Of a stretch of DNA of 64,000 bases, positions 1,655-45,435 are shown in pieces (the first letter of the stretch is position 1; each line of letters starts with the position of its first letter). The stretch lies in assembly GCA_051294905.1 (NCBI GenBank), contig CM119384.1, forward strand, positions 15,190,001-15,254,000, given 5' to 3'. The notes under the pieces were generated by a model. The model was given only the letters and a program-made list of their open reading frames with translations. It ran no database searches and had not been told where the DNA came from. Made by a program: the position numbers and the translations under genes. The DNA comes from Botryllus schlosseri. Lineage: Eukaryota.

Positions 1655-1693
1655 CTGGGCTTTTTCCAGCATGGCAAATAGATCGTCGTGTCC
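1655..1693 (-). CDS. RAP1GAP: 39-bp exon encoding the first half of a GoLoco/GPR motif (GHDDLFAMLEKAQ)
   Basis: Strong acceptor tttgtgtcttcctatttcag|, donor CAG|GTAAAA, phase 0-0 matching the 2268 donor; D-L-F-x-M-L-E-K-x-Q pattern; internal GCCATG. Confidence 0.75.
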
Positions 1694-1879
1694 CTGAAAT
1701 AGGAAGACACAAATTAGTCAACGCATATGCAACGCGTGTTTGGTGGGTAAGTCGTTTCGACATATGCGGTCACCAATGCACGTTACAGCACAGTACAAGT
1801 GTAATTAGGCGTGCAGCGTTTTTTTACGCAACCAAACAATTCAATCAATGAAGAAGTGAAATTAGGGGACATAAATATT

Positions 1880-2045
1880 TATATTGAAATAAACCCGAAT
1901 ATTTTCGGCCGACAGGGGTAATCGGGTGCATTTCAATATGGGTTGATTAGGAATAGGAATAAGACGTTTTACATGATCGTATGTATACTGAAGTTCAATA
2001 CATCGAAGAGTATCTTCTAACATAATATCGTATATTTTCGTCATG
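1880..2045 (-). mobile_element. Penelope-like remnant with a core-deleted hammerhead (1893-1923)
   Basis: ACCC-CTG[7-nt deletion]TCGGCC-GAAA-ATAT-TC-GGGT; upstream sequence resembles 60712-60813; the tail is also present inverted at 1924-1940. Confidence 0.55.
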
Positions 2046-2267
2046 TTTACAGCACACACAAGACAAGAGCAAGATCAAGTTTTCTTATTTTCGTCGTGAT
2101 TTGCATGCGTGGGAATTAGTAGGGCATAAGAAACGTCGAAAACCTCAATTCTCAACCGGATAGTATCAGTGACGCCAAGCAATAAACAGCATTACAGCCG
2201 CGAAACGGTCAATCTATTATTCACAGATTCGCGATAAGAGAAACACACGCACTGCAGTTGAACCCAC

Positions 2268-2355
2268 CTGGAAGCTGTCGATGGACTGCATTTTTCCGGA
2301 CATACCGTCGGACTGCGTGCACGGCTCGCAACTCAAACCGCCCTCTGCGTCCCTC
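2268..2355 (-). CDS. common exon completing the LIM domain (RDAEGGLSCEPCTQSDGMSGKMQSIDSFQ)
   Basis: Acceptor ttccttaccgcag|, donor CAG|GTGGGT, phase 2 to 0; gives the terminal C-x2-C 18 residues after the previous Cys, as the LIM consensus requires. Confidence 0.88.
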
Positions 2356-3063
2356 CTGCGGTAAGGAATTCAACGTTCAGATACAACGATCATACGCCAG
2401 TCAGTCACGTGACTCATGACACCACCGAAATAAAGAAGGATCGAATTCAAGGCAGGCGCTACAGGCAAATCCGTGTCGACTTTCATATGTGCATTTCGAA
2501 GCGTAGCTATGAAACGCTGTGCGTTATGATTGCCGCTAGCGCGCACATAGCAATCTGTCTATGATATTTTCGAACGAATAGAATATTATGTCTTTAACTA
2601 ATTAGTAATCATAGCGTTTTGCCACTGCCGCAATCTGGAATCCCACTGTTCAGAGTTATTCCAGTTTTTGCACCCTTGGTGCAGTACCCGACTTCCGTGG
2701 CTCATGATATCAGAAACGGCGCATGTTCACCTAGCGTGAACTGGCGTAAGTGCGTTCGACTATAGATAACTAGTTATAAATAGTTATCTATAGTTCGACA
2801 TATGACCTCACACAATAACAATCACAGTATCAGCGACGTGAAAATTCGACGTTATTAAGATCGAGCCCTGTCACGTCAGACTGGGGTGGATGAGACGTGA
2901 AGAGACCCGGTTCGAGTACTTAGTCGTATGGCATTTCGACGTCTTCCAATCTGTTCATTACACCGCATTGTGTGTACCATCATCTAACGCATATAATAGA
3001 ATCGCTGATTATTAGTATTATTTTTATTTGCATTTGCTGATAACGACTGATAGCGCCCGTTGC

Positions 3064-3124
3064 GACATCCTCCTTATCTGTTCATTACATCGCATTGTGT
3101 CTGCGTATGGAACTGTACATTGTG
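3064..3124. repeat. short dispersed repeat (also 2949-2973; inverted at 51404-51464)
   Basis: Shared ATCTGTTCATTACAYCGCATTGTGT core. Confidence 0.7.
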
Positions 3125-3335
3125 TTTTCAGCGGATAAATAATAGAACCCGCTGATGATGATTATCGGTATTCGTTGATAACGGCATTTGCAGATATTCC
3201 GCACACAGCTTAATAGATAACCGTTAACATAATTCCACAATGACACCGATAACGACCAGTGATAATACGCATAATTCATAACCACCACCACCAAAAAATC
3301 TCTCTATACTCCAGCCGCGCGCAGCAATCCGTTAC

Positions 3336-3779
3336 CTCCCATTCTGCGCCGCAAGCGCGGACGCGAAAGCCGCAGCGGCCGCGGCTTTTTCCGCCTTCCC
3401 CTTCGGTACCGAGTGCTTCTGCAGAGACCCGATAAAACGGGTTGATATCTTGATCGACCGCTTCACCGGCATGTCGCCTTCTTCGCTGACCAAGTCCTCC
3501 GCGCTGTCCTGTTGTTTCAAAAGCTCCGGAGACGACTCGCTGGCCGACACCGCGCACCTGCGCCTGCCCAGTCGCGCGGCAGGCGGCGGGTTCGAGTCTG
3601 TGCCTATGAAACTTTTCACGCGCCGCGCCGCCGATGTGCTGGCCACACGTTTCAGCACTTGGGGCGGTTTTGAGTCCTCGTGACTGGAATGGCTCCGCTG
3701 CAAAATCTGCCGGTATCGGGCATACTTCTCCAGGGACGGGTACCAGATGATCCTACTACTTCTCGTGTCCTCGCTGACA
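3336..3779 (-). CDS. 444-bp phase 2-2 cassette exon (VSEDTRSSRIIWYPSLEKY...AAAAAFASALAAQNGR)
   Basis: Acceptor gctacag| after a pyrimidine run, donor AG|GTAACG; frame open throughout (extends track ORF 3332..3703); 5' boundary less certain. Confidence 0.65.
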
Positions 3780-6700
3780 CTGTAGCGTAGTACGGTAATG
3801 CGCAGGGTTCCAAAGTAGCAAAATAAAGAGACACCGCGTTAGCGGGAGAAGATCCAAAAACGGCGACTCCCAACAACAACGCTAGCGACCTTAAAGCTCG
3901 TGAAAACGGCGCAGCGAATATACTCAATTAGTTTTTGCCGTTTCCGAACGAAAAACTAGCTCACATCACAAATACGCGTCTTTTGTGACGAACAAAAACC
4001 AGTCCCGACTGTACCGTCGCACACGCAAAACTATATTTGCGGACAGTAATCTTGCCGCGAGAACTCTTTTTATTCGATACGATTCATCGTTTACTGCCCG
4101 TCACGAATTCGTTAGGTTACAGAACGCGACCACCTGCTATGCCATGTCGTTTATAGGGGCGTGCACAATGATTCGGGTACTCTAATACGAATCAAGTATG
4201 CATTGTCATGATTCGAGTCGCGTAGTGGGAGTCTGTTTTCGAGTACTGACATTGTATGCCCCTTTCCACGAATAATTATATTCTTATTGTCGATGAGACT
4301 TATAGTCTTAATGCTTTTTTCCACCGTGGAATTCTTGAAACCTCGATTGGTCGCATCACAACATTAAAAATACCTAAACCTGGTGACTAGATTGTGATAT
4401 CAGTCCCGGTAATAAGATCGCTCTCTCTTCGATCACAGCTTTTCAAAAAGCCGATTCAGCACGCAGCATTCGTCAGATCAGCGATAAGATAACCGCAGGA
4501 CGCAAACTCCGTCGACTAATCGCTGCTACTAATTTGGCATTATCAATTATCTCGATTAAGCGTGACAGAGCAGGATACAAAAGTCAGCGTTTGCTATTAA
4601 CGCTTCTCAGAACACGACGTCGAGTATGCAAATTAGCTAGCAACCGACAGCAAATTAGCAGCTGCAACGGGGTCACCTCCTACCAAAACAGCCACAAACG
4701 AAATTTAACCAAAAGTAAGTCTCCAACATCTAGCTACACCATCGGATACCCGCAAATGAATGCAGAACAAAAAGTTAATGATTTCCGATCCGCGAAGTTA
4801 ATCCAAAACGCCATGCAATCATTATGCTCCATACGATAAGCGCATCAAACGTGTTATCACAAAATCGATCACCAACGATTCATATCGCCTTAAAACCGTG
4901 GTAATGCAATTGCAGGCAATAAATGACTGCAAATCTCGCATACTCAACATGGAATAATGGTCCATCTCCTCACAGCACCAACCAAATTATCAAAACGACT
5001 CCGCACCTTAATAAAATCCGCGTTTATGCAAATTACAATATAATGTTCCGAACGATTACACACGACCTACTAAGTTCTCGCCCGAAATTATCGACCGCCG
5101 GTGAAAATAACTTCTGGTCCTACTGCTCGCGCGTGCTCGGGTCAAGGAAATCACGTTTCATTTCCTGGTTTCACGCCAAAATAGTTACAACGATCAGTTT
5201 TCGGGAAGTATGGGGGCAGTAATGCATCCTCACCTGCCGGGTGAAAATAACAACTATGCGCTGATATTATCGACAAATGAATTATTAAAGTCCCCAGCAG
5301 TAGTATAGATATTAATTTGGTAATGATCGAAGCGTTCGCGGGCCACATATCACCGTCAACGGGCCCCACAGCAATAACAACACTATCGATTCAATTTTGC
5401 GTCACTCCATGTATAACGACATAAGTTAATATAAGACTCCGGATGCATCATTATGACATACATCTCTCAGTAGGTTTCCACTACACGCACGACGCTTTTT
5501 GCGACATAGCCAGCGTATAAATTAGATTTTCGGGCGTGCGATGCCAAATAATTGATTAATTATTCATTTCCGCGAGCACGCCCGAGCAAAAAAGTGGTAT
5601 ATTCACGACAATATTATATCCTGGTTGAGTAATGTTTGCCGATTCGAGCGCATCGGTAATAATGACATATTATCCAGGGAGAGGTATAGGCGACATATTC
5701 AATTGGCATTAGCACGTTCTGTTAACGCGGTAAACATTGAGAGCAAAGACAACAAAGAACTTGTACCAACAAATGATATTAAGGCAAACACTACAATAAG
5801 AATAAGCATATTTCTGGTCCTTGTGTCGAGATAATGAAATATGACATGCCGACTACACCCAACGGTCCAACGAGATACTAGGTTCAAATCGTCAATTTTC
5901 CAACATTACAGTCCAAAATAAAATCACATTCAGAAGTTGGTCTGATATATTCATGACGCCATAACAGTCCCACAAAGAAGTCATCGTTAAAATCCCGCAT
6001 TATTCAAAAAGTCCGGATTTCATAATCATAAACAACGGCACTACTATCGCAGCACCAACCTATTATACAAGCAAATTGAACTGGAAATTTGGTGGTATAG
6101 ATAAAATATATTTTCCTGACTCTCGGGCCCTGTCAGATATGGATAGAATATCGACACAGCAGCGAATTTTTGTTAACTAGCTGGGTATAGCGTGTCACTA
6201 CAATTCCTACTTTGAATTCGGAGTATGGAGACCCCAGATATTTTTGCTGATACCATGAGAACTTGAAACACTCATCGTACATAATCTGATATCTGCCATT
6301 GACGAGCGAGGTACCTTGCACTTAGAGCTAAAATTATCCACTTATCCACTCCAGATCGACATAATGCCCGCGTAACGCTTCTACGCAAAACACAACAAGC
6401 CTAAATATTGTAAACTCCATATCAACAAAAATTCCAACACCGCTGCTCCTCCCTTACGATAGCTGACCCATGTATGTATGTAGGAGTAGGTACAATGTAT
6501 AGAACACAACCTCGCACCAACGCGCTCCTTGGGCGGTTGCTAACTCCAGGCAGCTGCGGTGCGACAGAGATCTCCCATGAGGCGTACGTAAACAACCTAG
6601 GCTCGACGCGTAAATTTAAGCTAACACGACCATCGCGCCAAGACGTGAGCGCTGTTATCAAGACAAAAAGTTAATAGTTAACAGCTCAGTGTCGAATATC

Positions 6701-9700
6701 GCAACTCCACAGCCATAATTTGGAACCGCTCAACTATCGCTTGGGTTCAAGCGGCGATAACCTATATTACGCATCCAAACGGGAATTCCAGCTCGCAATC
6801 GATAACCGCACGGCTGGAATGCCGGTAGCAAGCACTCCTAATGCGCCATATGGGATACTTTCCACGCTTTAGCTACGGCAAACCAACGCTAAATCCCCAA
6901 TTCCGCAAGAACAGCACGTCCGAAACACCCATCACATTCGTCAGGATTAGGTAGCGTTACCATAATACACACGAATAGGACAACAATGACTCAAGTGTTC
7001 TGACACAATGGCATTCAAATTTCAGAGCGGAGGTGCATTGCACACATTCATTACTAATTGTACTGGGGTTATAACGTGACTTGCCCCCTCCCCAACGTTG
7101 ATTCCAATCGAAATTGAGGTTCAGGTACGTGGCGCAGTGATCAATGTTTTTCACTAGCGTGTACAGCGTGAACACTGAACATACGAAAATGCAAAGAAGC
7201 ACCCCGGATTGAACCTAGTAGAGTCATGGCCTGACCGAAAGACACAGGGCAACAGTCAACACGGCCCATTCCACGAACGCATATTTCATAACCAGGTAAG
7301 TATGATGTTTGGTTCCTCAACGTCCACTTCTTTCAATATGGGTAGTGACAATCGTGATCTATGACTTGCAGTGTGTTTACGGATATTTTTATGATTAACG
7401 CTATACACTGCTCGAGTTATGTAACCTTCTCCCACACAACTACTCCAATGAAGATGTCGAGAAACGCAGGTAAATGCTCACAACACACCATATCGCGGGG
7501 GTTATTACAGCTAATTCGGCGTGTAACACCAAGATGTTATTCATAATTCATGACTGCTACTGTCTACTAGCAAGATAGCACACTGACATTAATCACCTAA
7601 TGAGTAATTTTAGCGTATGAGTTCATTAAAGGCGTCCCTTACATGGTTCGTCACTATAGTGATTAGCGCAGCACTTGAAGAAGACCAATTGAGAAAGTAA
7701 CTGTAGTTTGTTAAGATGACCCAATCGATCCTATCTATACAGACAGAGTGCGCGCGGCTCAGTGAAGCCAGGCCGTGTACTTCGCGTTTAATTGGGTACC
7801 CGCAAAGAGAACAGTAGGCCATTGTGAGCAATCCTATTTCAAAATCATGATACGCAAAAAAAGCTAATCAAACCCTACGGACAAACCACATCGCTGGCAG
7901 ATCATGTAATGTTCTGGTGCAGGTACCCGTTAGTAATGGGGGAATACTACATGACGAAGTTAACCATGATCAACCAAGCCAGAGGCTAGAGGCGAACAAT
8001 CGAGAACCATTTTATATTTCTGTGTTTAATGTTCTACCTCAGAAGACATTTCTCCATGATACAGCCATCTAGCTGTCACCTAGTTTAAGCGGTGGCGGTG
8101 AAAACTTTATTCAGGTCACGAGATGACGTCATGTTCTATTACAAAGCGCGAAAATCACTTTTACACCTCGTAATCCACCTCTGTTTTGTTATTAGTCAAT
8201 CGCAGCCGCGTAAAAATAGATGAGATTAGGATTGTTGACTAAATTTCACAGAAAGTACCTACAACATACAGGTGGCTCTTATGTATGACGCGGCGCATCT
8301 CAAGAATTTCCTTATAAGGAATCCGTAAATCTTGGTCGAGACAGGGTTACCAATACCATAATATCTATTATCTACGGTTTGGATTCGTAATTTCGAGATC
8401 CCTCGGCATAGTTAGCATTATTCAATTCTTGTGTCTTCATATGCATATTACGTAACATCCCTTCATCTTATTGTCCACTGCCGTGATTACACACTACAGT
8501 TTTTAATAATCGCACGGGATCGACACATCAAGAATATTGCGATCGTAATTCCCACATTATCCCGGCACGTCAGGAATTAGCTTCGCAGATGCAGGCGCAC
8601 AATACCGATAAGGATATGCGTCACTTGTTCTACGACTTTACAAAGGGGCAATTGCGGACAATAATTTTTATTTGACCCTAGAGAAACATAAGGTGTCGTA
8701 ATCACTGTCGATTCGTAGTGAAAGCTTATGAAACGAAACGTGCAAAATCCAAACGCGTTTCCGCATGACGTGAAAATTAATTTCGGTGAATAAATACGAG
8801 GCACCAACTCGCTAGGTGGCTAGCACGCGCGACTCCGAGATAAGCCAGCAGCTGGTAACTTACAATGTACTGTACAGTGCATAGGTCAGGCCAGATTTGT
8901 AGCAATGCCATTAGCGATTTTATACATATATTTATATTATGTTAAAATCCATTACGCATCGACCGTCCAAGGCATCAATGCCGGCAAATCGATAGTCTTT
9001 ATACAGATGTGAGAGCATAATTGAACCCAGCAAATATATTTTGTGCGCATTCAACCGAGTATAATTCGTAATTCGTCTAGGGATGATGGATAAAGAATAC
9101 CGCAGAGTCAAACGAAGCACAATATCTACGTATGTAAAACATAGCATTAGCCTCATTACAGATCGCGTCGCACAAGCGTATCAATTGGCCGGGCGCATAA
9201 GTACCATCAACATTTGCGGGCATCTAATCGGTATGTTTCAATGTTTTGCGAAAACAAAATTGGCAAATCGCGGTAAGTTTGTTTTTTGAAAATGCTGGAA
9301 ACCTACGACTCGGTTACAGAGCATTTACAAACATATCATGCCGAACGGCTGACGGCAGTAGACGCGCTGCTTTGCAACAATCATAATTTTGAACACATCA
9401 AATGATCTCCGCGCAAAAAATTGATGCTAACAGGTATTAATCACCGCTTCCGTATAATTAAACGCAGTGACTCAACGTAAGTTGCGGTACTTTAAACGTA
9501 AGCGTAGCTAGACTTTAATCGCACGTTACGCGCACAGTTCGCCTCAAAATCCGCCCAAAACGAAGCCAGTTCGCTAACTCATTCATTAGTTACATCAAAC
9601 CAGACAGGGCATCTGCCAGTTCGCAGCGAACAATTGACTGGTCGATATCAAAGCGTTACTGCGCGTGCAACTGTTATGCATACTATGACGTAAATAAACT

Positions 9701-10146
9701 AATTCCTGTATCACTCCACGCAAAGGGAAGTTGAGTAAAGTACACTGCAGAATAGCCTACAATCATCAATCGGTATTCCCCAACGAATTTGAGGCATTAA
9801 CTGTAAAATGTTAATACCATACGAAATACCGTATATTAAACATCTTGTGGCATACAGCGAGAGCATTCGGACAATGTCCTATCGATTCGATAGGACCTCG
9901 TGACAACAATATGTAAATGCCTGATGGGTACAAGCTCTCGTGTCATTGGCATAGCTCTTGTGACAAACTGGGTTCCGAAGAACTATTGAACCGCAACGTC
10001 AGTAGTAACGCATACTAATTCAACAGGTACGGTATGATAAGAACCATCGTCGCGTGTTATATAACAAGATGCCGAGTGCAGAATTACGGCAGTTAACGGA
10101 AGAATTCGAATCTAAAATTTGCGCGGTTTTCACGAGACGTTAAGGT

Positions 10147-10194
10147 CGAGTAGGATTGTTGTATGAGTTGCGAGTAGGATTGTTGTATGAGTTG
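10147..10194 (+). repeat. 24-bp-period tandem duplication
   Basis: CGAGTAGGATTGTTGTATGAGTTG x2. Confidence 0.9.
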
Positions 10195-11008
10195 GTCATC
10201 GCAATTCCATCTGTACCTCCTATTCGTTATCGCCGGCAAGTAAGTTACGTCATCCTCGTCGGTGAGTCCAGTTGCAGAGGCCGGGCGTCGTTCAATTTCA
10301 CAATCCTCCATCGCAAAGTTCGTTAGCTACCAGACTCAATACTACAGTAGAGCACCTTGCTGAATGTTCAGAACAGAATGGCCACAGTAATATGAAGTCC
10401 GTCGATAACCTGCACTGACTTGCGACAACGCTATTTTCAAAGGCCGAAAGAAGTTCTACGCAATCGGCTTTCAAGACACACCAGTTAGCCCCCCGCCAGC
10501 CTCAGTTACACGAATAATTGCCTCATGATCCCCCAGACAAGTCTAGCGGTCGCGTAGCGCTCTTTTTCTCCCTGCAATCCGCGCTAAGTATTCTCCCAAT
10601 CGATGCATGTCAAATAGCCTATCAAAAATCCTTCTCGACTAATGCACCTGGCGTGTAGAGCGGGCAAAGAGGCCGGCTGACAAATACTCATGCGTAGTGC
10701 GGCGCGTGCAATACGCTCCGTGTTAAAGCGTAGAGGAAGTGTTGTCAAAGATAAACAGTTCCGTTTCATCGCAGAGGTAGGCGGGACTGCCACAAGAGTC
10801 ACGCTTGAATAATGATCCAACTCTCAACAGTCGGCACTTATCATACAATTGGTCGCTGGGCCAATAATAATTATTGACTATTCGCGTCGATACAAAGACC
10901 CTAACCGCCGATACAATATCCATAAAGGTGCAGCCTAATTCAAACCCACGGCGCTGCCAACATGTCACACACTCACGACCACAGGGGTGCCTTTATTTTG
11001 TACATGCA

Positions 11009-11655
11009 AGCTAATGAAAAGCTAATGCAGCTAATGAAAAGCTAATGCAGCTAATTAAGCTAATGAAAAGCTAATTAAGCTAATGAAAAGCTAATGAAAA
11101 GCTAATTAAGCTAATGAAAAGCTAATTAAGCTAATGAAAAAGTAAGCTATTGAAAAGTAAGCTAATGAAAAGCTAACTAAGCTAATGAAAAGCTAATTCA
11201 GCTAATGAAAAGCTAATTCAGCTAATGAAAAGCTAATTAAGCTAATGAAAAGCTAATGAAAAGCTAATTAAGCTAATGAAAAGCTAATTAAGCTAATGAA
11301 AAGCTAATTAAGCTAATGAAAAAGTAAGCTATTGAAAAGTAAGCTAATGAAAAGCTAATTCAGCTAATGAAAAGCTAATTCGGCTAATGAAAAGCTAATT
11401 AAGCTAATGAAAAGCTAATTAAGATAATGAAAAGCTAATTAAGCTAATTAAAAGCTAATTAAGCTAATGAAAAGCTAATTAAGCTAATGAAAAGCTAATT
11501 AAGATAATGAAAAGCTAATTAGGCTAATTAAAAGCTAATTAAGCTAATGAAAAAGTAAGCTAATGAAAAGTAAGCTAATGAAAAGCTAATGAAGCTAATG
11601 GAAAGCTAATGAAAAGAACGCTAATGAAAAGCTAATGAAGCTAAAAGCTAATGAC
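11009..11655 (+). repeat. tandem array in the left arm (GCTAATGAAAA / GCTAATTAA units)
   Basis: Directly visible; variant CTATTG recurs at a 182-bp spacing. Confidence 0.97.
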
Positions 11656-13901: not shown

Positions 13902-14850
13902 GCATGTACAAAATAAAGGCACCCCGACCACAGTCGGTCACGAACTAAGCAGGATTCGATTTATAGCAGGATCTACATCGCGCAATAGATTTAACGAACC
14001 TAATGGCATATGACGTCAGATCACGTTATATATACATTAAGCCATACTGTGTTGTTCCCCCGTTATGCCAATGCAGGTAGGTGGCAAATATTCAGCAAAC
14101 TACCACGCCCCGTAATCGACATCATCACAGCACGGGATATCCGTAAGATATAATCGATTCCAGCCTCTCCGACCAGGCGATGTAATCAATTTTAACCACA
14201 TTAACAGACTAAAAATAATTTACTGAGTCGTTAAAATCTCATGCAGTCGTTCCTGTACAGCTGGCAACGTTTCTCAAATCCATTTCATCAATTTTCATGA
14301 TCCCAACCGAGTAGCTAGGGTTACTATTTTCGCGCGCCGCAATGACACGCGCCACACAAACGAAAATTGTTGTTGGGATACTTTCCAGTCACTGAGGGAA
14401 CCTTGAAACCCAGACACGAGATAGTATTGCATTCAATACATGCAACAGATGGTTTCCCGCGCGCCCACGCTGAAATATTATAGTATCAAACGACCTGTAG
14501 CATAATCTCAAATCGAAACGACGTATTACTGTCAGCTAACCTGAGATAATTGATATAAATGAGTCATGTAACTGGCATTATTTACTTCACAGTAGCATAA
14601 TAAGTTATTGGACACTTTATCATGTTATTTATTACTTTATATGATTTATTACTTTATTATTTTTATTTGGACACTGCAAGTCCTTATTACTGTTATGACG
14701 TCATAATGAGTGCTAGTGCTACTACAATACTCGTCTAGGAATCGAATCGATTTTGCCCACTCCTAAACCAATTATATTCGCCAACTACAGAACGCACCGG
14801 GCGCAATGACACCATTACAGACAATCCCATCTTACGAATATAACACCAAC

Positions 14851-15152
14851 CTTGCAACGGACGACAATCTCTCTAAAATCACCCCCTCTTCGATAACAAC
14901 CGAGTTCGTTGCTTTCAAATTGGAACTATTCCTTTTTCCGGCCTTACGCCGACGCAGTGAAGGAGACAGGGCCGACCACCAGGGCGACCCCTTCAAATTC
15001 ACTTCAGAGTCCATCAGTTGAGGCATGCTCTTAGGCCGTTGCTTCTTGCTGCCTTTGCGAGTTCGTAACACATTCGGTTCTTCATATTTGACTCGCCTGA
15101 TCACTGCCGAATTCCCGTTTCTTCTCAGCCGTATTCCCACAACTGTATCCAT
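14851..15152 (-). CDS. alternative first exon (MDTVVGIRLRR...KQRPKSMPQL...LSSVAR)
   Basis: ATG 15152; two candidate phase-2 donors, AG|GTTGGT (exon end 14851) and TC|GTAAGA (exon end 14836). Confidence 0.8.
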
Positions 15153-16575: not shown

Positions 16576-16608
16576 CGACTTGTTTTCAGTGTCAGCGCCT
16601 GATCGCAC
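16576..16608 (-). CDS. 33-bp micro-exon of the LIM domain (CDQALTLKTS)
   Basis: Acceptor ttttcctcttattttcag|, donor CG|GTGAGT, phase 2-2; supplies the second Cys of C-K-K-C. Confidence 0.88.
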
Positions 16609-32226: not shown

Positions 32227-32990
32227 CGCGCGTTTAAATCCCCGCCTTTCGAACCGCTCTTCCTACTCCATGGAAACAACGGCAGCGTCCAAGACGACGC
32301 GGACCTTTTCTTCGTGGACCCGCGCTTTTTGGGCCTTCCTTCCTCCGCCCGCTGTTCCTCCACCAGATCCGGAGTCGATCTCTTAAACAGGCTCAGGGAC
32401 GACGACGCGTCACGCTTGATCGAGAACACCGCGGGCATAGAACGCCGCCTGCCGGAAGGTCTCTCCACAGACAGCCTACCGGGCTCAATCCCGTCGTCCC
32501 GGCTTCGGCTTAAAGCAGCCCCGTCCACGTCCTCGATTACAAACTGCAGACAGCGTTGTTTGTCCATTTTTAGCGGCTTAGGCTTCGTGTCGTTAAGGGG
32601 CACGCGCGTAGGCTTGCTACGACGGCCCGAGTCTTCGTCAGGCACGTAAAACGTCACGTCTGTGGAAGACCCCGATTGTCTCTTGCTTCTGCTTTTGTTG
32701 CGTATGCGCAACGCTTTCGGTAGATTTTCAGACGACTTCGGACGCGGCCTGTCCGATCTAATTGCGGGCGGAGAAGGCAATCGGCCGCGCTGGTCTTTTA
32801 CGGCAGCGCAAATATTGACGTTAAGCGCCGAGACGCACCGTCTCTCTTCGTTGAGAGCTTCGCAACAGCTGTCTTCGTCCGACACCCGAGAACTGATGGA
32901 ATTCGCCCGCTTGCGTCGGTTCCCCACAAACTTTTGGTAGCATCCCACGTCCGGAGAGCTCGGGACTCTTTCGCCTACGCGGCCAGCCAT
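32227..32990 (-). CDS. large alternative first exon (254 aa, basic/Ser-rich, probably disordered)
   Basis: ORF from ATG 32990 ends at donor CG|GTGAGT (phase 2); GC-rich coding-like patch. Confidence 0.85.
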
Positions 32991-35370: not shown

Positions 35371-35685
35371 CAATGGTTCTCAACCCGGGGGCGCGCCCCC
35401 CTTGGGGGGGCGTGAAACATTTGAAGGGGGCGCAAAGAAGCAGTCACCTGAAAAAAATTTTCGCGCTCTGCGCGATTTATCTCCAATGCACGCGTGTTTC
35501 TCTCTATATGGACCCAATTTCATATATTTTTATTCTCTCATCAATATTCATAACCGTCCATACCACCAAACAATCTGTTGGGGTTGCTAGCATCCCGGTT
35601 GGCTTTTGTGATATGACGATAAGGGGGCGCGAAATTTTCACTATCAAAAAGGGGGGCGTGTCTAAAAAAAGGTTGAGAACCACTG
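35371..35685. mobile_element. hAT (Charlie-like) MITE
   Basis: CAATGGTTCTCAACC...GGTTGAGAACCACTG termini; 8-bp TSD CACTAATA. Confidence 0.9.
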
Positions 35686-38600
35686 CACTAATAGATGCGA
35701 CAAAGGATATTGACGCCACGTCATAACAAAGTCATTTTCCGATCCAAAATGTCAAGAGTTGCTGTATCTCAAAGGGCTGGTTTTTGCGATCAATAAAACA
35801 ACGCCAGAAGATCGTTGCGAGAGAGATATGATGTCGCAAAATCGTGGCGCGTTTAGAATTGGGGGAGTAAGCGACATTGACCCCGTGTGAAGTTACAATT
35901 TCCAGTGGATTGTGGACCTGAATGTCGAGGAAAGTACTCGGCGAATTGTTGTCAGACCTTGGAATTCAATCATATGGAGCGCGGTATAACTCGATTGTTC
36001 GCAATTCTACGACGTTTTTCGCATCACGCGTGACTCAAGTTCATAGCGGGTTGAAAACTGAAAGTGGATCAAACTATTCCGATTGAATAAATTATACAAA
36101 CATGTTAGTAAAGTGATCTGAATCTACCACCAAATTCGGTTGAGACACATCACGAATTTGCGCTACTATACTCATCCAATACGGTATACAGTAAGGGCAA
36201 ATATCAAGTTATTTGCAGTTAATAAAGTGACAAGTAGTCGCGAAACGGATAAAACACACGCTATTGCCCGACAACCAACGTGTACGATTTGCAAAACGCC
36301 AGGCGCTAATTGACAAGGCCGCGAATGCTCAGTATCAGTGAGTCACACGGAACGCAGAGATTCAGCAAATTTTTGCGTGACGCTTGGATCGAGTCCAGAA
36401 AAATATTTATGAATTATCATCACCGCCTGCTACATGTAACGAAGAGCTTACAAAGTTGAACTGATGAAATAGTTGACGAACGGCTGGGACACAGAGATAT
36501 ATATCGGACACGGATGCGTCATCCATCTCGACAGATCATTTCTACCATATCAGCGCGGTCTGTCAAAAAAATTAAGATCAGCCACGACGGGATACGCGCG
36601 ATAATCGGTCGAAATCAAAATTCGCGGTCGCAAACAGACGAAAATATCCATCCGAACGGGCGATGGAGAATTGCGCGTGGATTATTACGAGAAATAACAA
36701 CCCGTCGCCGTAAACAAAGTTGCTAGATCAGAGCGGCTGTTGGAAAATCCGACGCTACATCTCGCTTAGCGAGAGAACTGCTGAAAGTGGGCGGTACTAC
36801 AAGGGGTCAGCTCAGGAACCAGCCAAGGAATATCAGCCTGGTGTGAATGAACATAGCAGTCGAAACTCCACGAATATGTTATAACAGCAACCAAACCAAG
36901 TCCCGCGATCCGCTTTGTGTTGAAGCGATCAATTGTATGGTTCTCTACTCACTAGCGAACGGACATTGCTCAATTTCGTCACGTTTCGTAGATATGTGCG
37001 AATCGCACCATACGCGCTGAAGTAATCTAAAGAGCTGTATTAACATGGCACGCAAATCCAAATACCACCCGTGGACATATTGGCATGCGACCTTAATAGC
37101 ACACGACATTGGAGCGTTTGGTGAAATTTAGGGAAAGGGTTTTGGGTAAGAGTTAATTTCGGGATTAGGGTAAGTTGTAACGGTGTAAAGTCGCCCGCTC
37201 AACTGTCGTTCTTCATTGTGCCGCATGCTCTAACGTCGGACAGCCCCACATATGTTGGTTGCTATTGTTAGGAGTTAAAGATGGCATGAGAGAAACTGCC
37301 GATAAGACAAATTCCTCGTGGGAACAACCTATACAGAGTCAAATATGCTTTCGAACTGCCCTATTTAACAATAAAATTTATTTTAAACTACGCATTTTTC
37401 CATTTTTAACGGCACCTGCACATACAACTCAATCTGTCCCGAACCGAAATATATCTTACATCCCACGCAAATAGCCGATACCGATATTCCTCAAATCCAC
37501 GACATCTGTGCCGATATATCATATGTCCTCACCCATTTTCCTCGCGTATACCTTATCGATGTACTATCACTGATCTCATCGACGCTAGCAAATAAAACGC
37601 TCCCTGAAAATACCTCTCCACTTCTAAACGAGACGGTCAACGCCAAGTCTTAATTGCTGTCGGCATACAGCATTGCGCCAGAATAACCCAACGATTATAA
37701 TGAGTTCTTCAACGACACTGCCTTCGACAAAGAACAGACGTTTCGCAGCTACTACCTGACGGCCGCATTAGCACTTCGTCAGGAGCGATAATTTCACAAT
37801 GACATACTTCGGGAAATAAACAAATTGATCGAAATTCGAAACGACCCGAGCAATAACAGCGGCAGACAATTACGCGTCCGGGAAGTTGAAAAACGTTGTG
37901 TAGCGATTTCGCGAAGACTAACCGTAACGCATCCAATAATAGAGATTGAATCATGCATAGGATGCAGAAACCAGACTTCGCCAACTATAGATAATTCTAT
38001 TTGTCTAATTTCGCTAGTTGGAGCAAAACGCCGGTAAAATATTTCTAATTCTAATCGAACTTCTTGTTCTCTTTAAAATGCTACAGGAGCACTCAGGGAT
38101 ATCTATAACTCCTTCTAGATATCCATTCCCTGCATAGTGTGAAACGAGCCAAGCTTGTTGAACAGACATTTTCCATTCTCTGCTTATGTGAGAGAGAGAG
38201 AATGTGAATGGACCCTGATTCGATACGAACTGAATTATTGAGTTTCCAAGTTTTCACGAATTCAGTAATTGCAATTCCAATCTAATTTGAAAATAATGTG
38301 TTAATCCAATTCTATTTCAAAATAATTTGAAAAGCTGAAAATTTTTCAATTGTCCAACTCTCGAATTTCACCGACATGGAAACGAGCCAAACCGGGGGAT
38401 GAGGCTTTTTCACTCGAAATTTTGGATTCTATACTCCGCAGCGTAACAGTGGCCCGATATCGTCTACTCATTATTTCAAAATTTTGGTATTTCACATGTC
38501 TTTATTTATTGGCATACGGCGAACCGACATATAGATTCCCGAAGCATTGGCATTGCGAGTTGGAACTAACAGCCATCCGTGCGCCGCATACTTGCATTAG

Positions 38601-39865
38601 CACAGATGTGCGTAATTGCAGCTTGGAGGACGCCGTGACACCACGGTGTTCACGGAGCCCGCCGCTTACGATTCGGGAAATATATTTCAAAATCGCCGAC
38701 GCTTGGATCGACAACACAACCTTCGAGACGACTCTTGAATCATCGATCATAAGCGCTAACCGAATTTGAAATGATTCACGGCGGCCACAGATCGGATTTG
38801 TAATCGAGCTAGGTTCTTAATGAAACCAAGTGACAAGAATACGCGCGTACATCACAGGCTAAACCTCGCCATGACTAAGACAAGCCACAAACCCGCGTCC
38901 CACCATGAATCCAACGAAAACAGCCGTTACGGCCTTGGCGCAGTTAAAATTAGACAGAAAATCGCATTACGACAAACTATACAAGTGCAACACCAGGATT
39001 ACACGAGTACAATCCCCATAGACTGGCAGATAGAGAAATTTAACAAGTTTTTTTATGCTTTTCTAGTATTTGCGATGTTTCGACTACATTCTCCATTTTA
39101 CACAAGGCCGGTACTCGTTACTATAATTTATTCAACACAATGCAATTTCACACGAGCAAAATTTCCAATTCCAATCGTAACGGGACACCCATCGCCCCCG
39201 ATTGCACCGCGCGCCATTGAGGAAAACGCAAAAGACGGTCCCAGGTGTCCTATTTCCACAGGGGCTTGTTCGCACGCACGGGTGGATTAGCTTTTCAGAC
39301 GCATGTCGAAATCGAAAGTTTAGGATTTCGGGAATGATAGCCGGGAGATACGTAAAATAAATTGAGCTACTGTACCAACGAGATCAGACGGATTACAAGC
39401 GCCAGTCTATGTAGTGTGAGAATGTATTCTGTGCTGGCACCCGACAAATGGATATCCTAATAACCAGCAGGCATACATACAAACTAGCACGGAAGGCTAA
39501 TTTAATACCCCCTAAACAAACACAGTGGGACTGGAACAAAGTACTCCTACCTTTACGACCCGAATAGGTTTTGCTTTCACATACACGCACTTGGTTATGT
39601 TTATAGACTTACGTCCACTTTTACAGTTTTTGACGCTTTCTAAACTTTGGATTTTGTAAAGCAAAAAATAGTTTTGATATATTTTGTAAATCGCTACTTA
39701 TACTGGTAATTTAGAGGACAATTACGGCGTTACTTCCACACAGTGATGAATATTTCAAACTACAATATCACGACAAACTTCATTTAATGTTGTAACGAGT
39801 CATCGACGACACAGGACAATTGATAATTATATTATATTATATCAAGTCGATTTTTTCGGATCCAC

Positions 39866-40286
39866 GGGTTGCATTTAAAAATACTAATTTAAAACAAACA
39901 TGTTAAAACAAGGCCCATCTTTTTATTGTTGTTGTTTTTTAAGCCATGACGTCACGAATATTCAGTTGTGAATGTGACTTCATAGTGGAGTGGCATTGGC
40001 AATTTAAAATACAGGGTAAATATAGCTCCCTTGGCGAAATATCTATACGTACTGTAGCTGTTGAACGGACTATTTGGAGGGCTCCAACCATCCCATTCAT
40101 CGTATGCGTCTGCTCTAGCGGGTGATAATCGTCAGTCGGCTCATACAAGATGTTTTTTGGAAAGCATTTACACAATCATGGCATAATTTCACAACTTGGA
40201 AAAAACACAATTTTTTTTAAAGGCCCTTGTTTAAAACATGTTTTAAACAAAGTGTTTTAGGATACCGTTTGTTTTAAATGCAACCC
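39866..40286. mobile_element. second copy of the 44339 MITE family, same orientation
   Basis: GGGTTGCATTTAAAA...TTTTAAATGCAACCC and a homologous interior; TSD not recognisable. Confidence 0.85.
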
Positions 40287-43200
40287 ACGTACACGTACAT
40301 CCTTATTTCGGAGCTACATAATATATCTGAGATTGGCATAGTAAGGTCTGATTAAAACGAGCTGCCAACAAAGGAATCAAAATTCCATAGTTGGAGACAA
40401 CGGAACTGTCCGGGTTAGACAAATCAAAATCACAAAACACGCGTTCTTATTTCGTACAAGTAGGTCATCGGATTATCGCATATTGTCTCGAGCCCGGTAA
40501 ATAAGGTAAGCTCTAACCTTCCGACAGCGGCAATCTTGTACGTAAACAAACGAGACTAAACAAAGAATTAGCGCAGCAGGTAATAGAACAACATCTCGGT
40601 CATTTGACAGGCAAATGACCAATACTTTAATCGCTGAGATCGTGAATACAAGACCTTATTGCAGCGGTGTTTGATGGGAAATCATGCGGCAGTTTCATTA
40701 CCGCCGGACACCTTCGATGTCAATGACGGAATGAAATTCGTGCCCTATTACGATGATTGTCACCTTCCTGTAAATTAATTAGGTGCAGGCGTGATACGAA
40801 ATTCATAATGAATGCAATTTGTTTTCACCGCCAACGAATAAAACGGGATATCAGGCTGGCTAGTCTAGTTTCGAGAAGTCCCCGTTTACAGGCTTTCATC
40901 CTCCGACATACTTCTCAATTTTATCAACAATGCGTGAGTGAGAACAGTCGGGGAAGACGTTCGGTAATTTAAAGTGGTGACATCCCAATAAGTTCATTTC
41001 AGTTATTGTGATCTAAAATACAGTGTTGTTTGTTTATGACGCAAACAAACGAATTACCACAATCGGCTTCGAACGCGAAGCTTCATTTTTACACATACAC
41101 CAACGCAGTGGCGTAACTTATATCTGCCGCATAATGATCAAAGTTATTTGGAAAATGCACGAAAGCCGTAAACCTAGCTTATGAGGATGGAAGCTGATAA
41201 AAATCTCAGTAGGCAAGATGCGACCGTGCCATTTCAAGCTATGCAATATGGAGCAGGTCTCAAATTGGAAACATACTAATTATGACTACGTGACCCCGTC
41301 GTGGTATTGATGTGTGATGACATCACTATAGAACATCATTTAATAACCAATCGGTTACGTATGCACTAACACTAGTAATATACTATCGTATGGAATACGT
41401 TTGCAGATCACTTCTTTCCAAAGTCGAGATGACCATTACCTCACACGAATTACATTACGTCAGGTACAAATTCCAGGCACCCAATCCCAAACAAACCGCT
41501 TTCTCAAAGTCGGCGTTTCGACGTTTATAAACAATTCACAGCGTGCGATGTCAATTCGAGGTCGCCGAGGCAGCACCTTGAAATGTGGATCAAATATTTT
41601 CAACCCGCCCTATTTTTGAACAGAAGTTCAAAGTCGCAGCAGATATAATTCCACCGATTTCAAAGATGAAACATCGTCGAAACTAGCAATTTCTTTTTTA
41701 CTGACTCACAATACTGCAGTTTCATTGACAAAATCAAATTCAAACAATGAGATTACTCTCAAATTTAAACGATCCCCTTCGGTACTATCTAATACTATGG
41801 AATTTTAGGTCGTTGGCGATATTACTGGGGTTCTAGGAGGATTTCTAACCGTCACTTTGCATCGCCAATAAAACTGGATTTCTTTGCCAGATACATGATA
41901 AGTCCGTACGAATATAGTTTCGTTTGTAAAATTACATAAAAGAGGATAGAACTACCGATACAGTACCGGTATACCATTTTCAAATTCACGTGGCGACCTA
42001 ACTTCGACTTGACGCGTCGCCAATTGGCAAGGTATTACCCACTTGGCGTATCGGTATGAAACGGCGCATGGGACAAAATTTAACGTCAAAATAGGGAATA
42101 TCACATGCGCAAAAGCGGCATCGTATACCGGCGTCGAGGAGTGTGCAAACCAAATTTTTCTCCGCCGAAAGATCAAATATTGAATATGCATCGCATCACG
42201 CATGCGGACAGAGTGGTGCCACATGCCACCTATTTACATTACGAATGCCGCTCTAGGTTGAGCCGAGACAAAGGTATGACAAGACGAGGGCGGCTTACAT
42301 GAAACTATATTTGCTCGGGTGAAATAATAATAATGGATTTCAGAGACGGCGTAAACATAAACGAGATGGCGTATGCAAAACGCTCGTATCAGACAGATGT
42401 ATAGTGTATACCGCGGCGTTTTCAGACGAGACGATGTTTAGAGACCAATCGGATAACGACTTGTATCGAAACTACGATAAACCCTATATCCTCGTACTAC
42501 ATCATCATACCGTAGCTCGTAAAGTGCTCGTAATATGAAGGACGACTCGCATCTTAGGGTTTCCATATATTGGCCACCGACTGTATGGCCACGTGTACTG
42601 CACAGGTATATCAGCAGACAGCAGCGGTTTCCTTCCCTATCCTGATTCCTGGTATACTTAACACTGCTCGAAAACCGTACTAGGTGCTAGCAGTCCTCCT
42701 ATATTCGAGGTTGTCATCGACATGGATCAAAACTTAACTCATTTTAAGCATAACTACTGATACCTTTGATGAGCACTAAAATATGACATACTAATGGCAC
42801 GAGTCAGAAGTAAGGACCAATCTTGTAAACTATGACAATGTACTTCGCCCTTTAAAATTAGGACAAATCTTAAAATTAATGACCCTGTATATAGTAGTGG
42901 TGCTATCATGTATTCACCATGACAACCATTGGACAGTACAGGTTCAAGCTGGTAATAATGATGGGCGCGGTATTTATCGCCTTCCTAGATAGATCCCAAT
43001 TCTGTTATTACACGCTACCACTCAGCTACAAAACAGTATTGCATTTTCCAAGGTTAGAGTCAGTAACTCTATCCTATGTTAACAACTCCGCATGTTCGGC
43101 ACTGCTCCGTTCAAATTGGTCAACTATGTTGACATCTCGTCTTTATCTCATTAGCAGCAACCCAAATAATTTACGCAAACGCATTACGTTATCTAAACAG

Positions 43201-44338
43201 CAGCGCTAATGCGACCGAGCGAACTAAAAACGCGGGCCTCTCGCGATGGGATGATAGATAACAGCCTTGCTAGAGTATTACAAAGTTGCTCAATAATAGC
43301 AATAATCTCTTCGGTAGCCAACTCAGCGAAACAAGACCTCCGTGGTTGACACGGAGTCGTAAAACCACGAATTTCAACAAAATTCGAGTCGCCGCCGCAA
43401 AATCTCCATTTATGCCTTCAGACATGTACTTTGCCCAATCGAGATTACCTCTAAAAGCAATTGAAAGCGAACCATAACAACAGGTATGGTATGTAACGAC
43501 CATTGCCAAACAGCGCGCTTAATCGTACTCCAGAAGTTAGCGCGCTATTTCCTAGACCGCAGTACGCGATTGCTCCAGTCCATTTTCAACTTGTCAATTG
43601 TATCTGACGTAGTCCTGCTTCCTCGTCAAACAATGTCAGCGCCTCGCGAAAGTGACAAGTTACGACAAGTTACGATCGCCCCGGAGTGATCAGTGCCAAG
43701 AAAACGTAGCGGTCGAAATCCGCGAACTACCGCGATGCTATCTTATCAATTTGATCGGTATTGTTGCCATATTGCGTCGAATGACGCCGTATACACAAAT
43801 GCGTTCTAATCCGATAATTACGTAGCGCGAATAGAGACACTAAGTCTACATTAATTAAGGAGTCGTGGTAGATGTTTGATCAACTCCACGGATTTGATTT
43901 TAAAATTGACCTGCTTATATTCAGCGACGCAACACAATCCTCAAAATTGACAAGCATTCTACGCCATTACCGCGATTTTGAAATTTCAGAAATCCCTGTT
44001 AAGCCAGTAAAGAGATACAACCAAAGACGACACCCAACATCTAAACGCAGTGGGAAATGCACGGAACAGATAGCGGGTTTTCTCGGGAATTGAACGCTTG
44101 GGTGCGATTCGGGTAGAAATTGATACCGACCTATTCAATTCATCCGGCGCGTTACACAGAAAGAAGTAAGAGTCGCGTCTAATGTGATTTTTCCTTGTTC
44201 CTATCACGTTTCGCACCGAACAGAATGCAATAGTATTTACATCAAACAAACAATCTGTCTTCGAGATTTGAGAACGCTCACTAGCGACCACGTCCGGTTG
44301 GAATGTCTAAGTTGGTGTGCGCAATACAGTACTACCAG

Positions 44339-44780
44339 CAGGGTTGCATTTAAAAAAAAAAATCAATTTAAAACAAACATGTTTAAAACAAGGCCTTTGT
44401 TTAAAACATGATTTTAATTTTTTTTAAGGCATGACGTCACGAATATTCAAGTGTGTCGTCAGAGTGGATTGACATTGACACTTGGAAATGTAGGGTAAAT
44501 AGTATACAGCTCTCTCCTTTGACGAAATATCTACGTACTATAGCTGTCGAACCGACTATTTTGAGGGCTCCAACCATCCCGTGTCGACTACGTCGGCTAT
44601 ATCGAGTGGTATTGTCCGTACGCTCATATATGTTTTTTGGAAAGTATTGACACAATTATGGCATAATTACACAACTTGAAAAATACATAATTTTTGTTAA
44701 AAGGCCCTTGTTTAAAACACTGTTTAAAACATATTTAAACAAAGTGTTTTAAACAACCATTTGTTTTAAATGTAACCCTA
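44339..44780. mobile_element. hAT-type MITE
   Basis: CAGGGTTGCATTTAAAA...TTTTAAATGTAACCCTA termini; 8-bp TSD ACTACCAG. Confidence 0.88.
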
Positions 44781-45327
44781 ACTACCAGACTTGGACAACC
44801 AGAAAATTTTCGTTTCTACAAATTAGATTAGAATTGGAATTATAGCTACTCAATTTTCTCTAAATTAGATTGGAATTACAGTCGCAAAATGTTGGAAATT
44901 GTGTTAATTCCGAATGAGAAAAAAACAAGTTCAGTTCATGTCATGTTAAATCAGAGGTTATTCTCGTAAACAAGAGAAAGTAAATGTCTGTACAGTACAC
45001 CAAGCTTGGCGCGTATCGCATTATATATTTCCCCTGCAGTATTTTCGGGAAATCAGAAATTACATTACAATTAAAATTAGGCAGAAACATTTCCCAAATT
45101 AGATTACCAGCATTTTCGCCTAGAACCGTCTATTGTCCAAGTCCACTCCTGCGTGGCCTTCCTGTTGTTGATTAATACACTAACAGCCATTCAACTTCAC
45201 TACTACCGCGTTGCGATACGCCGACAGGTAAACATCCCTGCTATTCTTCCAAAATTCACACGTTGTCAAATTTAAATCGACCAGCGGCACCAAACCAGCA
45301 ATGCATTCAGGACAAGATCTCACTTAC

Positions 45328-45435
45328 TTTTTGCATTTGAAGCACTCCCTGTGGTAGTGGGATCCCTTGAAAGATACGTGTTCGCCTCCCATGTTAACGG
45401 GGAATCCACAGCCGTCGCAGTTTCTTCGTGAATCC
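45328..45435 (-). CDS. LIM domain exon 1 (finger 1 C-x2-C-x18-H-x2-C plus first Cys of finger 2)
   Basis: Acceptor ttctttgcgtttcag|, donor AA|GTAAGT, 108 bp, phase 2-2; encodes DSRRNCDGCGFPVNMGGEHVSFKGSHYHRECFKCK. Confidence 0.92.

What the first reader, a model, noticed from the sequence alone, without database searches (positions are those of the whole stretch)
1655..45435. LIM domain fused directly upstream of a Rap1GAP-type GoLoco motif
Seen: four small exons join in frame with canonical splice sites into a complete LIM (C-x2-C-x18-H-x2-C-x2-C-x2-C-x18-C-x2-C) followed by SIDSFQ|GHDDLFAMLEKAQ|. Known: vertebrate Rap1GAP has an N-terminal GoLoco (NTDLFEMIEKMQGSRMDEQR) and no LIM domain. 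Inference: this is a LIM-GoLoco-(RapGAP) architecture that could tie Rap1 inactivation and Galpha-i/o binding to actin or adhesion sites. I cannot tell whether it is already annotated in invertebrates.
Basis: partly seen in the sequence, partly recalled or inferred. Interest (0 to 1): 0.75.

Follow-up and report, generated by a model that had tools for sequence, protein, structure and literature searches.

The report
Rap1GAP gene with ancestral LIM domain
This is the sea-squirt version of the Rap1GAP gene, whose longest form carries a LIM zinc-finger domain just before its G-protein-binding GoLoco motif. The layout is real and old in animals, but it is already present in public gene annotations of sea squirts, molluscs and a worm, so it is an ordinary orthologue.

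Summary
Four minus-strand exons (45435-45328, 16608-16576, 2355-2268, 1693-1655), all with AG/GT borders, join in frame into a complete eight-ligand LIM followed by the first half of a GoLoco. The next exon, 0.8 kb beyond the window start, is phase 0 and begins GTRLDEQRS. Rap_GAP exons follow 6-7.6 kb beyond the start. The gene is the ascidian Rap1GAP orthologue, about 96 kb long, and it maps collinearly on Styela clava LOC120327908 isoform X2.

The architecture is not new. Precomputed Pfam LIM+GoLoco+Rap_GAP is carried by public proteins of Styela, Ciona, Phallusia, four molluscs and the annelid Owenia. An intronless 3.2 kb JGI contig encodes all three domains in one frame. The LIM here is 41-52% identical to the mollusc and annelid LIMs, so it is probably ancestral to bilaterians. 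The vertebrate proteins I inspected lack it.

Conserved alternative exons at 32990-32227 and ending at 3336 enter at exons B and C and bypass the LIM. Exon D, 39 nt, carries the GoLoco first half and is skipped in some relatives' models. RNA reads of this species were too few to test the joints. No paper found describes the LIM. The actin or adhesion role is untested.

The parts
62073..62259 (-). Upstream coding exon of the long (LIM) isoform, in the disordered N-terminal region.
   Evidence: tblastn to Styela X2 residues 348-411. AG/GT borders and a continuous frame into the next exon.
59884..60000 (-). Coding exon directly before the LIM (...SPKKFSARSSIRKKF...). It ends with 2 bases that pair with the first base of exon A.
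   Evidence: tblastn to Styela X2 residues 418-444. Borders and frame.
45328..45435 (-). Exon A: the first LIM zinc finger plus the first ligand of the second (ligands C1-C5).
   Evidence: Pfam LIM 23.4 bits for this exon alone. 74% identity to the Styela LIM, E 1.3e-9.
32227..32990 (-). Alternative first coding exon (ATG, 254 codons + 2 bases, donor GTGAGT). It joins exon B in frame and bypasses exon A, so LIM finger 1 is absent.
   Evidence: ORF and donor. Homologous to the N-terminus of Styela isoform X7, E 8e-26. The in-frame join is shown.
16576..16608 (-). Exon B: a 33-nt microexon carrying LIM ligand C6 and CDQALTLKTSR.
   Evidence: 11 of 11 residues identical to Styela.
3336..3586 (-). 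Conserved alternative exon whose 5' border was not determined (the open frame reaches back to 3838). It ends with 2 bases plus donor GTAACG, in phase with exon C, and bypasses exons A and B.
   Evidence: tblastn to the insert of Ciona isoforms X4/X2, E 8e-9. Frame and donor. The equivalent piece precedes exon C in the JGI transcript contig protein P0070.
2268..2355 (-). Exon C: the last two LIM ligands (C-E-P-C) and the linker up to ...SIDSFQ.
   Evidence: tblastn E 2e-6 to Styela.
1655..1693 (-). Exon D: a 39-nt phase 0-0 microexon carrying the first half of the GoLoco (GHDDLFAMLEKAQ).
   Evidence: With exon E (outside the window, C14:15189152-15189214) it gives Pfam GoLoco at 33.5 bits. The equivalent exon is skipped in Clavelina isoform X3.

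Best explanation
The finding is the 5' part of the single ascidian Rap1GAP orthologue. The gene runs on the minus strand for about 96 kb, from a first coding exon about 19 kb beyond the window end to a stop about 12.5 kb before the window start.

Its longest isoform encodes, in order:
- a long disordered N-terminus;
- one LIM domain, split over exons A, B and C;
- a 19-residue linker;
- a complete GoLoco motif, split over exons D and E;
- the Rap-GAP dimerisation and catalytic domains, with the catalytic Asn in HIGND;
- a coiled C-terminal tail.

Shown here: the exons, their phases, the domain memberships, collinearity with annotated orthologues, and conservation of the LIM between tunicates and lophotrochozoans.

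Inferred: the catalytic domain switches Rap1 off. The GoLoco recruits or regulates the enzyme through G-alpha-i/o, as in mammalian Rap1GAP1. The LIM adds a second protein-binding input whose partner is unknown.

The N-terminus looks like a combinatorial module. An upstream promoter gives the full LIM. Conserved alternative exons that enter at exon B or exon C remove part or nearly all of it. Exon D, a 39-nt cassette, can remove the GoLoco first half. That recalls the mammalian 1a/1b difference, which switches G-alpha-o recognition between the GTP and GDP forms.
For: - Exons and frame.
- Downstream parts: GoLoco second half and Rap_GAP exons (67.3, 54.9 and 40.3 bits).
- Gene model: collinear tblastn of Styela X2 over the whole gene, from MNRD... 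at window coordinate 83142 to ...TTAEHLV at C14:15177524.
- Domain scores: Pfam LIM 23.4 bits for exon A and GoLoco 33.5 bits for D+E. Orthologues score LIM 27.7-29.7 bits, plus GoLoco, Rap-GAP_dimer and Rap_GAP.
- One-protein architecture elsewhere: Styela, Ciona, Phallusia, Liolophura, Patella, Haliotis, Gigantopelta and Owenia. An intronless 3168-nt JGI contig has one 867-aa frame with all domains.
- Conservation: all eight zinc ligands are kept. The LIM here is 80% identical to Styela's and 41-52% to the mollusc and annelid LIMs, against about 30% to any solved LIM.
- Fold: in the AlphaFold model of the Styela segment, the LIM has pLDDT 76-86 and hits only LIM structures.
- Alternative exons.
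- Mammalian GoLoco isoform switch: PMC12329598.
Against: There is no transcript evidence from this species. In four RNA-seq runs only a few reads touched exons D, E and F. None touched exon C, and no joint reached the reporting threshold.

Some RefSeq isoforms of Ciona and Clavelina carry the LIM without a full GoLoco, so the two need not always coexist. Most orthologue proteins are computer gene models. The LIM's partner, zinc binding, G-alpha binding and GAP activity were not and could not be tested here.
Confidence: 0.87

Rival explanations
1. In this species the LIM and the complete GoLoco are mutually exclusive. On this reading, transcripts that start at the upstream promoter and include exon A skip exon D (or D+E), so no protein carries both.
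For: Ciona isoforms X2/X6 and Clavelina X3 have LIM+Rap_GAP without a Pfam GoLoco. Exons D and E are phase 0-0 cassettes. No read joined C to D, although coverage was close to nil.
Against: Styela X2, Ciona X3, Phallusia A0A6F9DR11, five lophotrochozoan proteins and the intronless JGI contig all have the LIM followed by a full GoLoco.
Confidence: 0.08
2. The LIM exons are a decaying remnant with no function of their own, on the way to the loss suggested by the vertebrate proteins inspected.
For: None of the vertebrate Rap1GAP proteins I inspected has a LIM, and none of the three amphioxus proteins in the hits has a Pfam LIM. Several conserved isoforms bypass the LIM.
Against: All eight zinc ligands and the spacing are intact in every tunicate and lophotrochozoan sequence. 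The LIM is far better conserved than its flanks: 80% identity to Styela and about 50% to molluscs. It also folds confidently in the model.
Confidence: 0.03
3. The match is a chance pattern or a gene-model artefact that joins a separate small LIM gene to Rap1GAP.
For: Introns of 29 kb and 14 kb separate the LIM exons. Most orthologue proteins are predictions.
Against: Exon A has no start codon and begins at an acceptor, in phase with conserved upstream exons. Exons B and C are present even in isoforms without exon A. One intronless contig carries LIM, GoLoco and Rap_GAP in a single frame.
Confidence: 0.02

Closest known systems
Styela clava LOC120327908 isoform X2 (P0052). Also Ciona intestinalis LOC100183188 isoform X3 and Phallusia mammillata 'Rap1 GTPase-activating protein 1' A0A6F9DR11.
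   Same: Orthologues with the same order of disordered N-terminus, LIM, GoLoco, Rap-GAP_dimer and Rap_GAP. They are collinear exon by exon, with 57-80% identity in the LIM and 79-95% in the GoLoco. They show the same alternative N-terminal exon types.
   Different: Only species-level sequence differences. The NCBI entries are named 'uncharacterized protein', and no functional study of them was found.
Lophotrochozoan 'rap1 GTPase-activating protein 1(-like) isoform X2/X3' (Haliotis rubra, Patella vulgata, Gigantopelta aegis, Liolophura sinensis) and an Owenia fusiformis protein.
   Same: A single LIM directly before the GoLoco and Rap_GAP. The LIM is 41-52% identical to the one here and shares the CNGCGF...VSVKG...CFKC..CD..LTLK signature.
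   Different: The eighth zinc ligand is His rather than Cys. The N-termini are shorter, and the linker lengths differ.
Vertebrate Rap1GAP1 (Rap1GAP1b / Rap1GAPII with the full GoLoco, Rap1GAP1a with the truncated one).
   Same: Orthologous GoLoco, dimerisation and catalytic domains, about 50% identical over the region searched. The GoLoco first half is isoform-dependent, and in mammals this switches G-alpha-o-GDP versus G-alpha-o-GTP recognition (PMC12329598).
   Different: No LIM in any vertebrate protein I inspected. The mammalian truncation removes 7 residues through a different start, whereas here a 39-nt cassette exon carries the whole first half.
CRP/CSRP, FHL, CRIP, LIMD2 and EPLIN LIM domains.
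   Same: Same fold and ligand pattern. These are the nearest solved LIMs by sequence (CRP1 LIM2, E 2.4e-6) and by structure (FHL2, FHL3, LIMD2, CRIP).
   Different: Only about 30% identity. Those proteins have no GoLoco or GAP domain. The LIM here forms its own orthologous group with the mollusc and annelid Rap1GAP LIMs.

Membership tests
LIM domain (PF00412) | Eight zinc ligands spaced C-x2-C-x16-23-H-x2-C-x2-C-x2-C-x16-21-C-x2-(C/H/D). | tested here: met
   C-x2-C-x18-H-x2-C-x2-C-x2-C-x18-C-x2-C in the spliced A+B+C product. All eight columns are conserved in 11 orthologues.
LIM domain (PF00412) | Profile score at or above Pfam's gathering cut-off. | tested here: met
   Exon A alone scores 23.4 bits against 22.9, over profile positions 1-29. 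Orthologues score 27.7-29.7 bits over positions 1-55. The full spliced LIM of this genome was not scanned because it has no reference.
LIM domain (PF00412) | Double zinc-finger fold. | tested here: met
   AlphaFold2 model of the Styela orthologous segment has pLDDT 76-86 over the LIM. The 50 listed Foldseek PDB hits are almost all LIM domains, led by FHL2 at E 8.8e-5. The test was run on the orthologue, which is 80% identical.
LIM domain (PF00412) | Binds two zinc ions. | not testable with these tools
   Needs metal analysis of expressed protein.
GoLoco / GPR motif (PF02188) | Profile score above the cut-off, including the acidic-Gln-Arg triad with the arginine finger. | tested here: met
   The spliced D+E peptide scores 33.5 bits against 25.1 and contains ...LDEQR. 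Exon E alone scores 20.3 bits in the genome scan.
GoLoco / GPR motif (PF02188) | Binds G-alpha-i/o and inhibits GDP release. | not testable with these tools
   No G-alpha sequence of this organism was available by reference for a complex prediction. It needs a binding or GDI assay.
Rap1GAP family (PF02145 Rap_GAP with PF21022 dimerisation domain) | Rap_GAP catalytic domain above the cut-off, on the same strand and downstream. | tested here: met
   Three exons at C14:15182358-15183845 score 67.3, 54.9 and 40.3 bits and cover profile positions 26-184. They are collinear with Styela residues 747-926.
Rap1GAP family (PF02145 Rap_GAP with PF21022 dimerisation domain) | Catalytic asparagine ('Asn thumb') in the R-K-R-H-I-G-N-D segment. 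| tested here: met
   LQRKRHIGNDIVAIVFQD is present in the exon at C14:15183052-15182882. The role of this Asn rests on established knowledge of Rap1GAP.
LIM-GoLoco-RapGAP isoform group (annotated invertebrate Rap1GAP isoforms) | One mRNA joins the LIM exons to the GoLoco and Rap_GAP exons. | tested here: inconclusive
   For this species, four RNA-seq runs gave too few reads and no joints. In relatives the feature is met by the intronless JGI contig L037, with an 867-aa frame, and by RefSeq and UniProt proteins.

The most novel reading that the evidence does not exclude
LIM-GoLoco-RapGAP is the ancestral bilaterian form of Rap1GAP. It is kept in tunicates, lophotrochozoans and probably amphioxus, where the models retain the exon B+C equivalents, and it was lost in vertebrates. 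Its N-terminus would then work as a two-switch module. Alternative promoters or exons include or remove the LIM, and a microexon completes or truncates the GoLoco. Together these set where the GAP is recruited and which nucleotide state of G-alpha-i/o recruits it. No paper found describes the LIM part.
Probability: 0.5. Interest if true: 0.4.

Novelty: new member of a known kind. Interest (0 to 1): 0.3.

Why it matters
For annotating this genome, the work fixes a 96-kb Rap1GAP gene model with microexons of 33 and 39 nt that automatic pipelines easily miss.

For biology, the point is modest. Rap1GAP, a well-studied G-alpha-i/o effector in mammals, seems to have had a LIM domain next to its GoLoco in the bilaterian ancestor, and the literature searched does not mention this. 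Ascidians such as Ciona are tractable embryos. There one could ask what the LIM recruits, and whether vertebrates replaced it with a partner acting in trans.

The architecture itself is already in public protein databases, so the finding is an ordinary orthologue and not a discovery.

Tried and rejected
- RNA reads. Most laid reads belonged to a short dispersed repeat at window positions about 1880-1915. It supports no verdict either way.
- Short transcript fragments. A protein search with a 190-aa LIM-to-exon-F piece of Styela found only one JGI fragment without a LIM.
- ESM Atlas. A search with the LIM-GoLoco piece gave no usable hit.
- Styela locus. The look-up of encoding contigs for Styela X2 found nothing on record, so exon borders could not be compared with the Styela genome.
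- Literature. No paper holds Rap1GAP + LIM domain + GoLoco. Papers with Rap1GAP + Ciona, or RapGAP + LIM domain + domain architecture, do not mention a LIM in Rap1GAP. The Prickle2-Rap1GAP2 co-immunoprecipitation paper (PMC11576107) was considered as a 'fusion reveals interaction' lead. I dropped it because nothing links that LIM protein to this LIM.
- Tunicate-specific fusion. This was my working idea. I rejected it after one search showed the same architecture in molluscs and an annelid.
- Ciona X3 N-terminus. A Pfam scan of it and of its match beyond the window end found no domain.
- Complex prediction with G-alpha. Not attempted, because no eligible G-alpha sequence was available.
Full report
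**1. The observation**

- A, 45435-45328
- B, 16608-16576
- C, 2355-2268
- D, 1693-1655

Each is preceded by AG and followed by GT. Exon A ends with two bases of a codon, and so does exon B. Exon C ends in phase 0, and D is a phase 0-0 exon of 39 nt.

The joined product reads ...NCDGCGF...HYHRECFKCKKCDQALTLKTSRRDAEGGLSCEPC, then 19 residues, then DDLFAMLEKAQ.

Exon A alone passes Pfam's LIM cut-off (23.4 against 22.9 bits).

**2. What lies beyond the window**

The window is G000:C14:15190001-15254000 of a 495-Mb genome. A six-frame scan of the genome with Pfam Rap_GAP found three exons on the same strand at C14:15182358-15183845, scoring 67.3, 54.9 and 40.3 bits.

A scan with the GoLoco profile found its second half at C14:15189185-15189220. 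Read directly, that exon is C14:15189152-15189214. It has AG/GT borders, is phase 0-0, and reads GTRLDEQRSPMPVVSLPADKP. The spliced D+E peptide scores 33.5 bits on Pfam GoLoco against a cut-off of 25.1.

The next exon (L031:8421-8642) encodes the Rap1GAP-typical YPSIQEVLRKGAPYPQVIPPPQGGYWAQG segment. The catalytic RKRHIGND segment is present.

**3. Identity of the gene**

The exon F peptide retrieved tunicate proteins. A word-indexed search named them: Styela clava LOC120327908, Ciona intestinalis LOC100183188, Phallusia mammillata 'Rap1 GTPase-activating protein 1' and Clavelina lepadiformis LOC143449350.

Styela isoform X2 (1236 aa) maps collinearly on this locus. It runs from a first coding exon MNRD...ELRIFWEEKSPGSAG at window coordinate 83142, beyond the window end, through exons at 62259-62073 and 60000-59884, then A, B, C, (D), E, F and about 14 further exons, to ...TTAEHLV at C14:15177524. 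The gene spans about 96 kb.

Pfam finds LIM (27.7-29.7 bits), GoLoco, Rap-GAP_dimer and Rap_GAP in the Styela, Ciona and Phallusia proteins.

**4. The architecture is not new and not tunicate-specific**

A search with Styela residues 448-960 listed proteins with precomputed LIM+GoLoco+Rap_GAP. Besides the tunicates, these were RefSeq 'rap1 GTPase-activating protein 1(-like)' isoforms of the molluscs Liolophura sinensis, Patella vulgata, Haliotis rubra and Gigantopelta aegis, a protein of the annelid Owenia fusiformis, and a JGI protein P0067.

P0067 is encoded by one uninterrupted 867-aa frame on a 3168-nt contig. In this genome the same coding stretch is cut by many introns over tens of kb. 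The contig is therefore most simply a transcript, and it shows LIM, GoLoco and Rap_GAP in one mRNA of a relative. It also carries the tunicate-type SDLF/LRRLSPDRRKSPK motif.

In an alignment, all eight zinc ligands are conserved in all 11 LIM-bearing sequences. The LIM here is 80% identical to Styela's, 56-57% to those of Ciona, Phallusia and Clavelina, and 41-52% to the mollusc and annelid LIMs. That is well above the roughly 30% to the nearest solved LIMs (CRP1, FHL, CRIP). The LIMs next to the GoLoco are thus orthologous across protostomes and chordates.

The Branchiostoma lanceolatum model begins M-CDAPLTLRTYRKRSMEDGLYCTDH, which is the equivalent of exons B and C. Amphioxus therefore keeps at least the second half. 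The teleost and gecko Rap1GAP1 proteins I inspected have GoLoco+Rap_GAP and no LIM, and no LIM appears in the vertebrate rows of the 120 listed. Loss in vertebrates is the likely history. It is not proven, because only 120 of 4308 hits were visible.

**5. Structure**

An AlphaFold2 model was built of the Styela LIM-GoLoco segment from a nine-sequence alignment. It gives a confident LIM (block pLDDT 76-86), a low-confidence linker, and a single helix for the GoLoco (pLDDT 42-59). Foldseek against the PDB returns almost only LIM domains, led by FHL2 at E 8.8e-5. Nothing suggests that the two elements pack on each other.

**6. Alternative entries that bypass the LIM**

I tested this and found three things.

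(a) An ATG exon at 32990-32227 has 254 codons plus two bases and donor GTGAGT. It is homologous to the N-terminus of Styela isoform X7 (E 8e-26) and joins exon B in frame. Its product has only ligands C6-C8.

(b) An exon ending at 3336 (two bases plus GTAACG) is homologous to the insert in Ciona isoforms X4/X2 (E 8e-9), and to the piece that precedes the exon-C equivalent in a second JGI contig protein, P0070. It is in phase with exon C.

(c) A further ATG ORF at 15152-14836 with a phase-2 donor has no homologue that I could find.

So only transcripts from the far upstream promoter encode an intact LIM.

**7. The GoLoco is also toggled**

Exons D and E are both phase 0-0. Clavelina isoform X3 lacks the exon-D equivalent only. 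Ciona isoforms X2, X5 and X6 lack D and E.

In mammals, Rap1GAP1b with the full GoLoco binds G-alpha-o-GDP. Rap1GAP1a lacks the first seven motif residues and binds G-alpha-o-GTP, which activates it at the plasma membrane (PMC12329598). By analogy, which is inference only, inclusion of the 39-nt exon D here may decide which nucleotide state of G-alpha-i/o recruits the enzyme.

**8. Mechanism**

Shown: the gene structure, the domains and their conservation.

From established knowledge: Rap_GAP with its catalytic Asn stimulates GTP hydrolysis on Rap1, and GoLoco motifs bind G-alpha-i/o.

Inferred: the single LIM is a protein-binding module that gives the long isoform an extra targeting or regulatory input. 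To my knowledge, which is not tested here, force-dependent actin binding by LIM proteins needs several tandem LIMs, and this protein has one.

**9. Transcript evidence in this species**

Runs of the same species label were found.
- traces on exon F (run X16) and on exons E and D (run X18);
- nothing on exon C;
- no joints.

Most laid reads fell on a dispersed repeat. This neither supports nor refutes the C-D joint.

**10. Literature and verdict**

No paper in the library combines Rap1GAP, LIM domain and GoLoco. Surveys of RapGAP and GoLoco architectures mention GoLoco-RapGAP but no LIM in their text.

But the gene is an ordinary orthologue of an architecture already stored, though unremarked, in public annotations of many invertebrates.

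Noticed in passing
window 32227-32990 (-): A large alternative first coding exon (MAGRVGERVPSSP..., 254 codons) is conserved with Styela isoform X7 and more weakly with Ciona and Clavelina isoforms. It joins exon B and leaves a LIM with only three of its eight ligands.
   Followed up: yes
window 3336-3838 (-), conserved part about 3395-3586: An alternative exon is conserved with the roughly 190-aa insert of Ciona isoforms X4/X2, and with the segment before the exon-C equivalent in JGI contig protein P0070. It is in phase with exon C. In Ciona it sits inside the LIM, between exons B and C.
   Followed up: partly
window 14836-15152 (-) and about 10225-10260 (-): An ATG ORF of 105 codons has a phase-2 donor (GTAAGA) and no homologue. 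Separately, a 12-residue match (DEDDVTYLPAIT) to the N-terminus of P0070 has E 0.07. Both are possible further alternative first exons, but the evidence is weak.
   Followed up: partly
L033:2084-2287 (-), which is window coordinate 66084-66287, beyond the window end: The N-terminal part of Ciona isoform X3 (residues 130-197) matches here at 28% identity, E 0.012. Pfam finds nothing significant in either sequence.
   Followed up: partly
window about 1871-1940, with 50 or more copies genome-wide: A short dispersed repeat in the C-D intron has about 50-70 nt units at 80-98% identity on many chromosomes. It attracted most of the RNA-seq reads laid on the stretch, with varied flanks.
   Followed up: no
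P0057 (Branchiostoma lanceolatum RAP1GAP): This gene model starts with M followed by the equivalents of exons B and C (CDAPLTLRTYRK...LYCTDH). Either the N-terminus is truncated or an amphioxus LIM exon is unannotated.
   Followed up: no
L001:4570-4602, which is window about 3070-3102: About 30 letters of partly laid RNA-seq reads appear in two runs (X16, X20), at a place with no recognised exon. This is unexplained.
   Followed up: no
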